Shown here: positions 44,477 through 49,129 of the stretch, piece by piece
Position numbering within the stretch: position 1 is the first letter of the stretch
Layout: each line of letters begins with the position of its first letter
Assembly: GCA_907165135.1 (NCBI GenBank)
Contig: OU015566.1
Span: 12,586,001-12,650,000, forward strand
Reading direction: 5' to 3'
Origin: Oikopleura dioica
Taxonomy: Eukaryota > Animalia > Chordata
DNA: 64,000 bases
Notes under the pieces: generated by a model
The model's input: only the letters and a program-made list of their open reading frames with translations
Databases searched by the model: none
What the model was told of the DNA's origin: nothing
Program-made: the position numbers and the translations under genes

Positions 44477-47400
44477 TTATTTGTTGAAATAGCTCATGAA
44501 GGAATTTCGCATATCACGAATTTTTTCTGCGTTTTCGCCGTCCAAGGGGTTGGGGACAAATGTATTCTAGCAATGTTTTAGTACTCAGGTTCTTTCATGA
44601 AGCAGTCTTGCCTTTCTAGCCGAACTGGGCGAATTGGGCAACGATTGCCTAACTTTCGGGGTTGGTCGCTCTGGAGTACAGGGCTCACTCACCATTTTCT
44701 TAATTAAAAGAATAAGCTCTTCTTTGATAGAGGTAAAATCCAACCTTGTGGTGCGGATTCACGACCGTCTGCCCAGCACTAAAATCATATTTATTCGCAT
44801 CAGTTATCTTCGTTACGTGATTATATAACTGTTAAAGTGCACAAGAAGAAAAGGTTAATAGAAGGCAAGAAGAGTAGTTTGGAGAATATAAAAGGGACAG
44901 AAAAGAGACAGAATGAAGAAAGATGTGGTAAACGGTGCCGGTTAGACATGACATAAACTCACTTTTTTGCTATCGACTGCGGCCGGCTCGCTAAAGAATA
45001 CGTTAAAGATTGATGTTTGGAAAAATGCGCTTTAATAAACACACGTTGAATAGGTTTAACTTTAAAAATCAACATATAAGACGGGACGAATCAATTCTTA
45101 ATTTTCATCGAAAAATAATCCTCTCACTTTATTTCAAACAAAAACATACATTACGCAACATATAATCCATTTTACCGAGCTCCATTTTCTTGACAATCAC
45201 ATCCGCAATCAGTGCTTCATCATTTTGAGCCGCTACAGTTTGTAAATTCAGCCAACTGCTCTCGACGTTCACGATGATATCCCGACCATCAGCAGTGTGG
45301 ATCGCCCGTATTCCAGCTATTCGAAGAAAAGTTAATCAAGAAGACATTTTATGCATCGTCTGATATTGCTACTAGCAGATCATGTGCATGCATTTTTGAT
45401 GCAATTATAGTAATTGATGCATTTCTTACCAATGTCAAGTCCACCAAATAGCTCGCAAACTGCATCTATCCACAGTTTATACCTTTTTAAGATGCTCAAT
45501 GTTGCGAAAATTAGCTCAAAGCTGAGCAAACTTTTAGCTAAGCCGAGAAAGTTTGCTTATTAATTTTGTGAAGAAAAAAAACGTGAGGGTTTGTTTTTAA
45601 AGAGATTTTGATCTTTGTAGGTCACGGATTTTGAATTACACGATTTGACATAGATAACATCATAAACTCAAGATTGCGTCTTCTGCTTTGAGAGAGCATC
45701 CTTTCCTTGGAGTTATTTCAACGCGCTCGACCACAGGATTCCCTTCTTGAGGCGAGGTGCGGACATAGACGGAGTAGATTCCGCCAATTCGCGTGACGTG
45801 GAGCTCGTAAGCCGCTTTCACCAGTGGCTCGACCATGATGTAGTCGTCGATTTGTTGCAAGATTGGAATGATGTCTTCTACCTGTTCGCGGTTTCTAATC
45901 CGCAGTCGGGCGTCTTAGAAGTATTTTGGGAATTGATGATGAAGTAGCTTCGTTACCTGATCTATTTGAAGAGCTGACAATTGCGGGAAAGTCGCGGAAT
46001 CGACGGAGACTATTAGCATTGGGCATAAATGTGGTCGTTGTCACGGGAAACTCTTCAAAAGAAAATGTTAGGCGGATTCTTAAGAATCTATTTGAGCGAA
46101 TTTTGGGATGTCGAGCAGAATGGCCCGACCTACTCCCGCATGAGGGCGCCAGGTGCGCGGAGGACTCTGAATCCTCCGAACTTTGCGAGTCCAGGGAGAA
46201 CTGATGAGTTGGCGATAAGCCCTAAATACGATAATCGAGCCTTCCACCTGGGAGTGAGCGCAGCAGGGGCGGACGGGATACTTTTGTTCTACCCATGTTA
46301 GTATTAATTCTAGAGGCGAGTAGGAGTGATGGCCTTCTTTCTATGAGACATATATATATCAGAAGAAAGCTTTTCGCGCACAGAACATAGATTTTACGGA
46401 GGAGCAAAACGAGAAAGCTACGCTCCAAGTCTTGGATCAAAAATTGATTTTGACGTTTGATTTAGATTCAGCGCAAAATCTTACCTTTGAAAAGTTTTTC
46501 TAGTTTATTTATAATTTCATAAAAATGTGCGCGAAAAATCAGTCTAACGAAATTTTGCTCCTGCAGGGGGTACTACGCAGTCAGAAATGATAGCGGTGTT
46601 TGAACAGAGATTGACACACTTCACGCTAGGATTAGGCGGCTTCGCGCTCCCTTCCTTACTTGCCCACCCGCTGAGTAATTCATGGAGGTTCTCCATCTGC
46701 GCTCCCCTGCGCACTCTCCTCCGGCGCCATGCTCAGGGCGCTCTTCAACCTCTTTTCCGTTCTTCCACCTCTTTTCCGCGCGCCCTCTTGCGGATGAAGG
46801 TCGGGCCATTATGCTTTTACCCCGAATTTTGAGCTGATCAACTTTAGCGAGAACAAAATAACAGCGAAAAAACAAGGGTTTTTCTATGTTAATTCTGAGA
46901 TATACACTTTCTATTGGAAAGTAAGTACCTGCTCCAAATCGCATTCGTATCCTAGCAAGCTGGGCAAAAACCCATGGCGGGTCGAACATGTTATAAATTG
47001 AGTGGAGCGAGTTAATCGACGGAATCCCACCGAGCTTCAGTCCCAAAAGAACGCTTCGATGCTGCTTGGTCAATGGTTGTTGTCGGATGAGAATGAAGTC
47101 GGGGCGGAAACGAATTTCTTTGTTTTCTTCCCTGAGTTTTCTCGAACACGCCTTTTTTGAGGTTGGAAAAGAAAAGCGGATGAAAAGGTCACGGAAAAGC
47201 GACATGCGCGCACGTCAGGTTCTTAGATTGTCTGATCCAACCCAAACCTGGACCATGCCCTCATTAGTGGCGATAATAGTCAAATCATCGAACGTATGCT
47301 GCTCAACTCTGAATCTCATCCCTTGAACCGTCTTATTCGCAAAAGCCTTCCCCCTTGGGAGAGAATTTTACTCGCTGCTTATTGGAAAAGTTGTCGTTCT

Positions 47401-48554
47401 TACCAATCTGTCGCGCGATTTTCGATAACCAGTAGGCATTTTGACGACGAGTCCTGAAATAAACATTTGCATATGCGCAACTACTGTAAAATAAGACATA
47501 CAGATGGACAGTGAGATGGATACGTGGGTTCAACTGGGGAGATGCGCTTATTTGAATATAATCGCCTGGGAAATGAGAATAATTGATTCTCGCCCAAGGG
47601 TAGATTCTTATTCAAAGAAACATGCTGTACAAATGAGCTTTAATTACTGATTCGACTTACTGTTTTTTGGCCGACATTGACAGCACTAGCCATGTTTGAA
47701 AGAAAATTAGATGCAGTAGAAGCAGCGTTCGACAAATTCGGCCCTGATGAGTGGGAAACTCTCTCGGCTGGATTGCTAAGAAAACGCTGTTTCAGATTGA
47801 TAGAAATGCATAGTATACGTTTTCGATTATTTTTTAATAGTCTTTTGAGTCATATATTGACATATTACTTCATGATGCCGCTGAAGAATCCGGCTTTGCT
47901 TTTTTGCGGCTGATCGGTCGATTGTTGTGTCATTTCACCTTGTCTTTTAAAAGGGATGAAATATGCAGAGTCAAAGAAATACAGTGAACTCGCTTTTACT
48001 GTCAATTTAAGTGACGGTATTTAATTACGCAGTCGTTTATGAACTTGTGGCGCGTCAAACTTGCGGCTCCCTTGAGTCCCATCAGAAGCCGCAATTCGTC
48101 TTTACTAAGGGTGTACCCACTCAAAGATTGGGACAAATTTGAAATCGATGTGTTGCCTCAGGAGGCGGCTTTGTGACCACTCTTGGCTAGTTAATTATTA
48201 ATTGCACGCTTTTTCTCTCCCTCCTCATCCCCTTTCCTTGATATTCCTGTGGAATCTGACGCTCTGCTTGCTAAAGAATTTGTAGTAGAACTCGCTGTTG
48301 GGACCATGTATCCATTAGTAGGAGCAGCGTCCATCGTCGAGGAGGGTTGACCGTCAGCGCCGGTTAAACCCAAGTTTGTCTCAGACAGTCTCTAGAATTA
48401 TCTCTTTGTTAGAAAAGCGACCCTAGTTTATAAGGTTTATTTTTAATCGAATTAAAAATGAAGCGCTTTCTCTCAAAGAGAATTTCTCTTTTTCTACTTT
48501 TTTTCTCGTTGATTTTTTAAATTCCAAGAAGCTTACCCTTCTTATGTACTCCAT
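44477..48554 (-). CDS. SYN: Synapsin (a-type: domains A, C, Pro-rich linker, E), at least 9 exons; linker exons not fully resolved
   Basis: Domain A MEYIRR|RLSETNL...PTNGYM; domain C KCLLVIENRATDW|GKAF...VEQHTFDDL, FRPDFILIRQ, GGIPSINSLHSIYN..D.PWVFAQL, R|YKLWIDAVCELFGGLDI; domain E NAEKIRDMRNSFMSYFNK-stop. Confidence 0.9.
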
Positions 48555-49129
48555 GAATAATTCGTCTTCAAATTGTTTCTCTCGTTGTTGACGGGCAAGA
48601 TTTGTCGACAAGGGATTTTTCCTGTGTCAATCGGTAAGGGAGCACGGCTCGCGAGCGCCTCGGCTATTTGGAGAAAAAGGGATTAGAAAACATAAGTCAA
48701 GCAATTTAGCCCATTCAGAATATACACTCATCAGTCAAAATTTCAATATCGATTGCGCGAAAAAAAGGTTCCGAAAAAAGGGCCCGAAACAATTTTTCAG
48801 GTCTAAAAGGGCTCGACCTCTCTATCCCCCAACCGGGCCTAACCCTAACCCTAATCCTTACGGTAAGGACCTTACCTTTTATTGAAGAAGAATCTCTCTA
48901 AATCACCAGCTTTTCATTTATGAAGAAAAGTTAACAACGGACAAGATATCAAAAAACGATAACACCAAAAACAGTACATAGATGCGTGTCGATGAGGGAT
49001 GAGCACTAGCGGAGCGCCAGAGATCGATCGGGAAAATTGAATTGAAATGAAGTTGTCTTTTATCACTACAATTACTGTATTGCTCAGTATTACTTTTTGC
49101 GCTGTAATGAAATTGAGAACTCAAGGAAC

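What the first reader, a model, noticed from the sequence alone, without database searches (positions are those of the whole stretch)
44477..48554. Full-length synapsin whose ATP-binding site looks dismantled
Not evident from the ORF track, but domains A (with the RRLS phosphosite), C and E are all recoverable. Relative to vertebrate synapsin motifs: DKPW->DPPW, VVKMGHAHSGMGK->IVSSSNRSDAR (Lys and Gly-rich phosphate loop gone), SGNWKTNTGSA->PQEGNP, IIEV->IVNV, while surrounding structural residues are conserved. Established: the synapsin C domain is an ATP-grasp fold that binds ATP via these motifs. Inference: an ATP-independent synapsin that keeps the vesicle-clustering A/E domains, a natural test of whether ATP binding is needed.
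Basis: partly seen in the sequence, partly recalled or inferred. Interest (0 to 1): 0.75.

Follow-up and report, generated by a model that had tools for sequence, protein, structure and literature searches.

The report
Oikopleura synapsin lacking its ATP site
This is an intact, strongly conserved synapsin gene of the plankton tunicate Oikopleura dioica whose core domain keeps the synapsin fold but has lost the residues that bind ATP and form tetramers in every other synapsin sampled, so it is a natural test of whether synapsin needs them.

Summary
On the minus strand, 48554-44477, I rebuilt a 15-exon, 492-residue open reading frame. It has an A domain (RRRLS, Ser9), a full C domain and an E domain.

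An intronless mRNA contig from a sister lineage (P0161/L009) is colinear with window exons E7-E18. It has no extra exon that would restore the motifs.

The gene is under strong purifying selection (dN/dS about 0.02, with synonymous sites saturated). The same losses occur in two more distant relatives (54% identity), one represented by a full-length mRNA.

Among 238 other synapsins, K269 (219 of 220 scored), G276, W335 and K336 are effectively invariant.

The predicted fold still matches synapsin crystal structures (TM 0.88-0.91).

Loss of ATP binding is inferred, not measured. The replaced loops are themselves conserved, so "remodelled" fits better than "dismantled".

It is not wholly new. The Norwegian orthologue is already in GenBank (CBY34534.1) and UniProt (E4YGB0, "Synapsin-1"). 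C. elegans synapsin is reported to carry K225R and K269S. Another scan note flags a second eroded synapsin-like gene in this genome, which I did not test.

The parts
48537..48554 (-). Coding exon E2: ATG and MEYIRR, the first part of the A domain. It is preceded by a 5'UTR intron, 48645-48566.
   Evidence: Sequence and splice sites. RNA joint 48565/48646 and the spliced continuation into E3 in the sister lineage.
48237..48391 (-). Exon E3: RLSETNLGLTG... It holds Ser9 of the RRRLS site (48385-48383) and part of the B linker. Its donor is a non-canonical GA (AAG|GAAAGG).
   Evidence: The join to E6 follows the public model P0152; this junction has no direct RNA support.
47869..47943 (-). Exon E6: B linker (…KAGFFSGIM).
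   Evidence: Conserved with L001; part of the open frame.
47661..47775 (-). Exon E7: end of the B linker (…SNFLSNMASAVNV…).
   Evidence: The mRNA contig L009 starts inside it.
47404..47453 (-). Exon E8: start of the C domain (SKCLLVIENRATD).
47248..47353 (-). Exon E9: C domain (…RFRVEQHTFDDL…MVQ).
   Evidence: RNA reads in the sister lineage give the MVQ|ACSRKL junction.
46929..47151 (-). Exon E10: C domain, with DPPW. K225 is replaced by Pro at 46980-46978.
46053..46928 (-). 876-nt intron. It holds a 36-nt inverted repeat (46114-46149 and 46780-46815) and a chance Lys-bearing look-alike of the next exon (46925-46822). The same intron is only about 45 nt in L001.
45957..46052 (-). Exon E11: …FRDFPAIVSSSNRS. 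K269 is replaced by Ser at 45975-45973, and the former phosphate-binding loop begins here.
   Evidence: The same join is read without an intron in relative P0009.
45706..45913 (-). Exon E12: DARLRIRNREQVED… It holds D290 (45875-45873), the hinge E305 (45830-45828) and the shortened loop TSPQEGNPVV (45758-45729), which lacks W335 and K336. The donor is GA.
45430..45482 (-). Exon E13: (R)YKLWIDAVCELFGGLDI.
45176..45316 (-). Exon E14: AGIRAIHTADGRDIIVNVESS…KKMEL. E373 is replaced by Arg (45308-45306) and E386 by Asn (45269-45267).
   Evidence: The donor at 45175 is supported by RNA joint 44988/45176.
44963..44990 (-). Exon E15: linker (ASRPQSIAK).
44745..44778 (-). Exon E16: linker (NAGQTVVNPHHK).
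44612..44698 (-). Exon E17: short Pro-rich linker with RQSLPNSP. The donor is GC and the following intron is 45 nt.
44477..44566 (-). Exon E18: E domain (…GENAEKIRDMRNSFMSYFNK) and the stop codon.

Best explanation
This is the synapsin orthologue of Oikopleura dioica, from a lineage well diverged from the Norwegian reference. It is a functional gene under strong constraint.

Its C domain keeps the synapsin ATP-grasp fold. The canonical nucleotide site, however, was rebuilt on the stem of an appendicularian-like clade:
- Both phosphate-binding lysines (K225, K269) are gone.
- The Gly-rich phosphate loop is replaced by a shorter Arg-rich loop.
- The lid loop is cut by six residues, removing W335 and K336.
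- Both metal-binding glutamates (E373, E386) are replaced.

The most likely consequence (inferred, not shown) is that the protein no longer binds ATP in the canonical way and cannot form the ATP-dependent tetramer.

It probably still works as a phosphorylation-regulated vesicle-associated protein. That would rest on its intact A domain (Ser9 site), the C-domain scaffold and the E domain.
For: - Gene model: an intact 492-residue ORF over 15 exons. Of the 14 introns between them, 11 are GT-AG, 2 GA-AG and 1 GC-AG.
- Identity: it is 91% identical to CBY34534.1 / UniProt E4YGB0, "Synapsin-1" of Oikopleura dioica.
- Splicing: the mRNA contig L009 (protein P0161) is colinear with exons E7-E18 and has no added exon. 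RNA reads from the sister lineage confirm three junctions.
- Selection: against L009, dN is 0.05, pS is 0.70 and omega about 0.025. For the C domain alone omega is 0.021.
- Shared losses: P0233/P0162 (a full-length mRNA with A, C and E domains) and the L003/P0009 type carry the same losses.
- Phylogeny: the clade is monophyletic (100/100), sits on a stem of about 2 changes per site, and lies next to the ascidian Styela.
- Comparison set: in 238 other synapsins, position 225 is K or R in all, K269 is K in 219 of 220, G276 is G in 220 of 220, W335 and K336 are present in 212 of 212, and the loop is 15 residues in 211 of 212.
- Fold: the AlphaFold model of P0161 has C-domain pLDDT mostly above 90. 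Its TM-score is 0.88-0.91 with rmsd about 2 A to synapsin I, II and III C domains.
- Roles of the residues, from the literature: K225, K269 and G276 bind ATP (PMC2825198). K269 and E305 line the site (PMC2922380). The phosphate loop, the lid loop, E373 and E386 are described in PMC9678998. D290, W335 and K336 are needed for the tetramer (PMC8002314). The NWK-to-NWQ mutant K337Q is tetramer-deficient (PMC10933366).
Against: - No binding or oligomer measurement exists.
- The replacement loop (NR.DARLR.R.R) is Arg-rich and conserved. K279 becomes Arg, and the adenine hinge Glu (E305) and D290 are kept. A non-canonical nucleotide or other anion site therefore remains possible.
- RNA of the window's own lineage was not seen. 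The runs that were laid come from a diverged lineage.
- The E3-E6 junction rests on a public gene model only.
- A second synapsin-like gene is reported in this genome by a scan note, and I could not inspect it.
Confidence: 0.75

Rival explanations
1. The site still binds ATP or another nucleotide in a non-canonical way. The arginines of the new loop would stand in for K269 and the Gly-rich loop.
For: - The loop NR.DARLR.R.R is 70% identical between relatives that share only 58% over the C domain.
- K279 becomes Arg in all six clade members.
- The hinge E305 is kept.
- K225R is common in ordinary synapsins, in 50 of 238.
Against: - Position 225 is P, A or V among clade members, so no positive charge is maintained there.
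- The lid loop that covers ATP is cut by six residues and varies within the clade.
- Both metal-binding glutamates are replaced, and position 386 is N, S or G.
Confidence: 0.12
2. Division of labour between paralogues. A second, canonical synapsin elsewhere in the genome does the ATP-dependent job, which frees this copy to drift.
For: Scan note s1-319441 reports a second synapsin-like gene on another piece of this genome. Several sequence types exist in plankton data.
Against:
- No Oikopleura protein with canonical motifs turned up among the named hits.
- The 54% relative P0233 has the full A-C-E layout of an orthologue.
- Omega of about 0.02 is not drift.
Confidence: 0.08
3. The finding is an artefact. 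Either the gene is a pseudogene, or the exon model is wrong and skips the real motif-bearing exons. One candidate is the Lys-bearing stretch YFVLAK…IRG read through after 46929.
For: HMMER aligned that read-through to the VVVK region of synapsin I with low confidence. Its frame and its GT donor would fit.
Against: - That intron is only about 45 nt in the sister lineage and lacks the stretch.
- The mRNA contig joins RFG(S)|EFPVTT directly.
- The ORF is intact and omega is about 0.02.
Confidence: 0.02

Closest known systems
Vertebrate synapsins I, II and III (PDB 1AUV/1AUX, 1PK8, 1I7L, 2P0A)
   Same: - The A domain has RRRLS with Ser at position 9.
- The C domain has the same fold (TM 0.88-0.91, 34-36% identity).
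- The E domain motif at the C-terminus is present.
- The hinge E305 and D290 are kept.
   Different: - K225, K269, the Gly-rich phosphate loop, W335/K336, E373 and E386 are all replaced or deleted.
- The linker between the C and E domains is only about 60 residues, against a long Pro-rich domain D in synapsin I.
- No TIMP gene is nested in any intron.
Ascidian synapsin (Styela clava XP_039263090, P0011)
   Same: It is the nearest named relative in the tree. It has the same A-B-C-linker-E layout and a similar E domain (NAEKIR.LR.SF).
   Different: Styela keeps VVK, GHAHGGMAK, NNWKANMGSAM and IIEV. It scores 337 bits on Pfam Synapsin_C, against 114-130 bits for the Oikopleura proteins.
Caenorhabditis elegans synapsin SNN-1
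   Same: It is a published natural case of loss of ATP-binding lysines, K225R and K269S (Candiani et al. 2010, PMC2825198). It is still a working synapsin in vivo (bioRxiv 10.1101/838953).
   Different: I could not retrieve the worm sequence. Whether its Gly loop and NWK loop are kept was therefore not compared here. Clade I nematodes (Trichuris, Soboliphyme) keep K269. In Oikopleura, position 225 is not even basic.
Engineered mutants: synapsin I K269Q and E373K, synapsin IIa K337Q
   Same: They target the same positions that nature changed here: the ATP lysine, the Ca ligand and the tetramer lysine in NWK (PMC9678998, PMC10933366).
   Different: They are single substitutions in a canonical background and they impair vesicle clustering. 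Here all the changes coexist in a protein kept by selection.

Membership tests
Synapsin family | Pfam Synapsin pre-ATP-grasp domain (PF02078) above the gathering score | tested here: met
   Window exon: 32.6 bits against a cut-off of 23. Orthologues: 68-74 bits.
Synapsin family | Pfam Synapsin_C (PF02750) above the gathering score | tested here: met
   Window exon pieces: 24.3 and 24.2 bits against a cut-off of 22.5. P0161: 130 bits. P0152: 114 bits.
Synapsin family | C domain with the synapsin three-dimensional fold | tested here: met
   Model of orthologue P0161 (92% identical to the window protein): TM 0.88-0.91 and rmsd 1.9-2.7 A to 1I7L, 1PK8, 1AUV and 2P0A.
Synapsin family | N-terminal A domain with the RRxS phosphorylation site (Ser9) | tested here: met
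   MEYIRRRLSE, with Ser at residue 9, read across the E2/E3 junction. Pfam PF10581 does not reach E 0.1, so this rests on the motif alone.
Synapsin family | C-terminal E domain | tested here: met
   The window's AEKIRDMRNSFMSYF matches Styela's AEKIRNLRKSFASMF. It is present in the mRNA-derived P0161 and P0233.
Synapsin family | ATP-binding residues K225, K269 and G276 (Candiani 2010) | tested here: not met
   The window has P, S and S at these positions. The 238 other synapsins have K/R, K and G.
Synapsin family | Tetramer residues D290, W335 and K336 | tested here: not met
   D290 is kept. W335 and K336 are deleted with six residues of the loop.
Synapsin family | TIMP gene nested in an intron (typical of animals except nematodes; not defining) | tested here: not met
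   The largest intron is 876 nt and its ORFs have no TIMP domain.
ATP-grasp nucleotide-binding proteins | Two phosphate-binding Lys/Arg, a flexible Gly-rich loop and acidic metal ligands | tested here: not met
   The fold is ATP-grasp: RimK, LysX and D-Ala-D-Ala ligase follow the synapsins in the structure search. The lysines, the Gly loop and both Glu ligands are replaced.
ATP-grasp nucleotide-binding proteins | Measured ATP binding | not testable with these tools
   This needs recombinant protein.

The most novel reading that the evidence does not exclude
The former ATP pocket has not merely been lost. It has been converted into a new, conserved Arg-rich site (NR.DARLR.R.R, next to the conserved AG[IV]RAIH…DII..[VI]ESS segment) that binds a different anionic partner, such as a phosphoinositide head group or a phosphoprotein.

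On this reading, appendicularian synapsin organises vesicles with neither ATP nor the canonical tetramer, and with only short disordered linkers. That would be a third mode beside tetramer cross-linking and phase separation driven by disordered regions.
Probability: 0.2. Interest if true: 0.75.

Novelty: new variant of a known kind. Interest (0 to 1): 0.55.

Why it matters
How synapsin holds the reserve pool of synaptic vesicles is an open debate. One view is ATP-dependent tetramer cross-links through the C domain. The other is phase separation through the disordered tail (PMC8002314, PMC10933366).

This is a chordate synapsin, kept by strong selection, in which four things have changed together:
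- the ATP lysines,
- the phosphate loop,
- the metal ligands,
- the W335/K336 tetramer contact.

Its disordered linkers are also short.

Oikopleura dioica is a laboratory animal with a very small nervous system, so the question can be tested directly. The protein is also a ready-made scaffold for asking which C-domain functions survive without nucleotide.

The value is tempered in three ways. The C. elegans precedent exists. Oikopleura proteins evolve fast in general. Nothing biochemical has been measured.

Tried and rejected
- RNA support in the window's own lineage. The single read-laying run used runs labelled as the same species. They come from a lineage about 20% diverged in the exons, so only conserved patches were laid. 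Those reads still confirmed three junctions in that lineage, because their loose ends match L001 exactly.
- Exons E4 and E5 in the B linker (48190-48135 and 48090-48030). I tried to place them because these stretches are conserved. No frame-consistent chain exists in both lineages, and the public model splices E3 directly to E6. I treat them as intronic.
- Lys-bearing read-through after 46929. Rejected; see the rival explanations.
- Conserved intronic block as a small RNA. There is no Rfam hit and no stable conserved hairpin.
- Telling paralogue from orthologue for the relatives. I looked for shared repeats and for synteny between L003 and the window and queried earlier findings by sequence. 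None of these was informative.
- C. elegans SNN-1. A search seeded with Trichuris synapsin did not bring it into the 120 hits listed. The worm comparison therefore rests on PMC2825198.
- Orlando et al. 2014 (K269Q) is not held in the library.
- Structure of the window protein itself. It was not folded, because a spliced protein has no reference. I folded orthologue P0161 instead.
Full report
**What is there.** The window has eukaryotic gene structure with many short introns. On the minus strand between 48554 and 44477, the six-frame translation shows pieces of a synapsin. Pfam Synapsin (PF02078) and Synapsin_C (PF02750) match the exon translations above their gathering scores. The only PDB sequence matches are synapsins I, II and III.

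**Gene model.** I defined the exons in three steps, using splice signals, comparison with a related genomic contig and an mRNA contig. The result is 15 coding exons and a 492-residue open frame from ATG 48554 to TAA 44479-44477. Eleven of the 14 introns between them are GT-AG, two are GA-AG and one is GC-AG. A further GT-AG intron lies in the 5'UTR (48645-48566). Both GA donors have the same AAG|GAAAGG sequence.

**Organism.**
- A word-index search with the largest exon found P0001, 92% identical, on ENA contig L001.
- P0001's 90% cluster holds CBY34534.1 / UniProt E4YGB0, "Synapsin-1", Oikopleura dioica, 520 residues (P0152).
- The window protein is 91% identical to P0152.
- Earlier scan notes also call this genome O. 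dioica.
- Synonymous sites between the window and the Norwegian-type sequences are saturated. The window therefore belongs to a deeply diverged lineage of that species complex.

- JGI contig L009 (1328 nt) encodes P0161 (383 residues) as one uninterrupted ORF. It aligns to the window as twelve blocks whose ends match exons E7-E18 to within 0-4 nt. The blocks abut one another on L009, so it is a spliced mRNA with no additional exon.
- The relative P0009 reads FPAIIISGNRNDARLRV within a single exon.
- The public RNA runs I could lay come from the L001 lineage. Their loose ends match L001 30 of 30. They show the 5'UTR intron, MEYIRR|RLSE and MVQ|ACSRKL.
- The Lys-bearing read-through after 46929, which HMMER weakly aligned to VVVK, lies in an 876-nt intron. 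That intron is only about 45 nt in L001 and is absent from the mRNA.

**The substitutions.** Alignments to rat and bovine synapsin I and to 17 named synapsins give the following.

| Synapsin I position | Canonical | Window |
|---|---|---|
| K225 (DKPW) | K | P |
| K269 (VVK) | K | S |
| Phosphate loop | GHAHSGMGK | SSNRSDAR, two residues shorter, no Gly, last K now R |
| D290 | D | kept |
| E305 (hinge) | E | kept |
| Lid loop | SVSGNWKTNTGSAM | SPQEGNPV (six residues deleted, W335 and K336 gone) |
| E373 | E | R |
| E386 | E | N |

Candiani et al. name K225, K269 and G276 as the ATP-binding residues (PMC2825198). K269 and E305 line the site (PMC2922380). The phosphate loop, the lid loop and the Ca ligands E373 and E386 are described in PMC9678998. 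D290, W335 and K336 make the ATP-dependent tetramer (PMC8002314). The NWK-to-NWQ mutant K337Q of synapsin IIa cannot tetramerise or rescue the reserve pool (PMC10933366).

**How unusual is it?** I aligned 244 synapsins of 280 residues or more to a profile: 6 from this clade and 238 others. The 238 others cover vertebrates, an ascidian, arthropods, molluscs, annelids, clade I nematodes and cnidarians.

| Position | 238 other synapsins | This clade |
|---|---|---|
| 225 | K in 188, R in 50 | P or A |
| K269 | K in 219 of 220 | S or I |
| G276 | G in 220 of 220 | S or gap |
| W335, K336 | present in 212 of 212 | deleted |
| Lid loop length | 15 residues in 211 of 212 | 8 or 9 residues |

The single exception at K269 looks like a truncated model.

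**Not decay.**
- Window against L009: dN is 0.05 and pS is 0.70 (dS about 2), giving omega of about 0.025. For the C domain alone omega is 0.021.
- Two further sequence types from ocean metagenomes and metatranscriptomes share the same state.
- One is P0162/P0233. P0233 is a 529-residue mRNA product with A, C and E domains. It has HAPW, ATVISGNRHDARLRV, a short loop (TAGNELVV), R at position 373 and S at position 386.
- The other is the P0009/L003 type. It has HVPW, AIIISGNRNDARLRV, a short loop (NAGSEIVV), R at position 373 and G at position 386.
- In a maximum-likelihood tree these sequences and the three O. dioica sequences form one group (100/100). The group sits on a stem of about 2 changes per site, next to Styela.
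- Between the window and P0233, the former phosphate-loop segment is 70% identical and the 373-386 segment 79%. The whole C domain is 58% identical.
- The site was therefore rebuilt once and has been held since.

**Fold.** AlphaFold2 on P0161 with a 46-sequence alignment gives mean pLDDT 81.8. The C domain is mostly above 90, with a dip to 68 at the shortened loop. The best structural matches are the synapsin C domains (TM 0.88-0.91, rmsd about 2 A), followed by RimK, LysX and other ATP-grasp ligases.

**Mechanism.**
- Shown: the gene is intact, an mRNA of a sister lineage carries the same exon chain, and selection is strong. The fold is kept. The A-domain Ser9 site and the E domain are kept. 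The canonical ATP and tetramer residues are absent.
- Inferred: there is no canonical ATP binding and no ATP-dependent tetramer. Function would then rest on the phospho-regulated A domain, the C-domain scaffold (probably still a dimer) and the E domain.
- Open: whether the Arg-rich replacement loop binds something else.

**Comparison and novelty.**
- It is a member of the synapsin family by domain content, fold and architecture.
- It fails the family's ATP-binding and tetramer features.
- The sequence is already public, although CBY34534.1 retains two mini-introns that the mRNA contig contradicts.
- I found no paper linking Oikopleura and synapsin in this respect.
- Candiani et al. report K225R and K269S in C. 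elegans, whose synapsin is functional (bioRxiv 10.1101/838953). A natural ATP-lysine-less synapsin is therefore known.
- New here is the wider, coordinated loss, which includes the tetramer contact, in a chordate clade.

**Limits.**
- RNA from the window's own lineage was not seen.
- The E3/E6 junction rests on a public gene model.
- The second synapsin-like gene of scan note s1-319441 was not inspected.
- The taxonomic identity of the two distant relatives is inferred from the tree only.

Noticed in passing
window 48130-48199 (minus strand, inside the E3-E6 intron): A block of about 70 nt is about 93% identical to L001, although synonymous sites of the gene are saturated. All three frames have stops at its 5' end. 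There is no Rfam match and no conserved hairpin. It may be a conserved non-coding element or a facultative exon.
   Followed up: partly
window 46053-46928: The E10-E11 intron is 876 nt here but about 45 nt in the Norwegian-type contig L001. It carries 36-nt inverted arms (46114-46149 and 46780-46815, 86% complementary, 630 nt apart), which looks like a foldback or MITE-type insertion.
   Followed up: partly
window 48236, 45705 and 44611: Two GA-AG introns share the donor AAG|GAAAGG, and the GA is kept in L001. A 45-nt GC-AG intron precedes the E-domain exon. Non-canonical splice sites are part of the normal gene here.
   Followed up: partly
window 45176-45224 (run X4): Seven poly(A) reads join the first 20 nt of the first C-domain exon (E8, as in L001 1520-1541) to the last 49 nt of exon E14. 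The join is out of frame and has no canonical sites. It may be a template-switch artefact or an odd isoform in the sister lineage.
   Followed up: partly
P0152 (CBY34534.1) versus L009 and the window: The public O. dioica protein model contains two in-frame retained mini-introns (VWVGSFPILKK and PGLSIFTQTSSLHYYQ). They are absent from the mRNA contig, and the first is contradicted by an RNA junction.
   Followed up: yes
window 44477-48554, all introns: No TIMP gene is nested in the synapsin gene. That arrangement is reported as conserved across animals except nematodes (PMC2825198).
   Followed up: partly
window 48952-49047: A 96-nt block upstream of the 5'UTR exon is 82% identical to L001 53-146. 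It could be a further 5' exon, a promoter element or the edge of the neighbouring gene.
   Followed up: no
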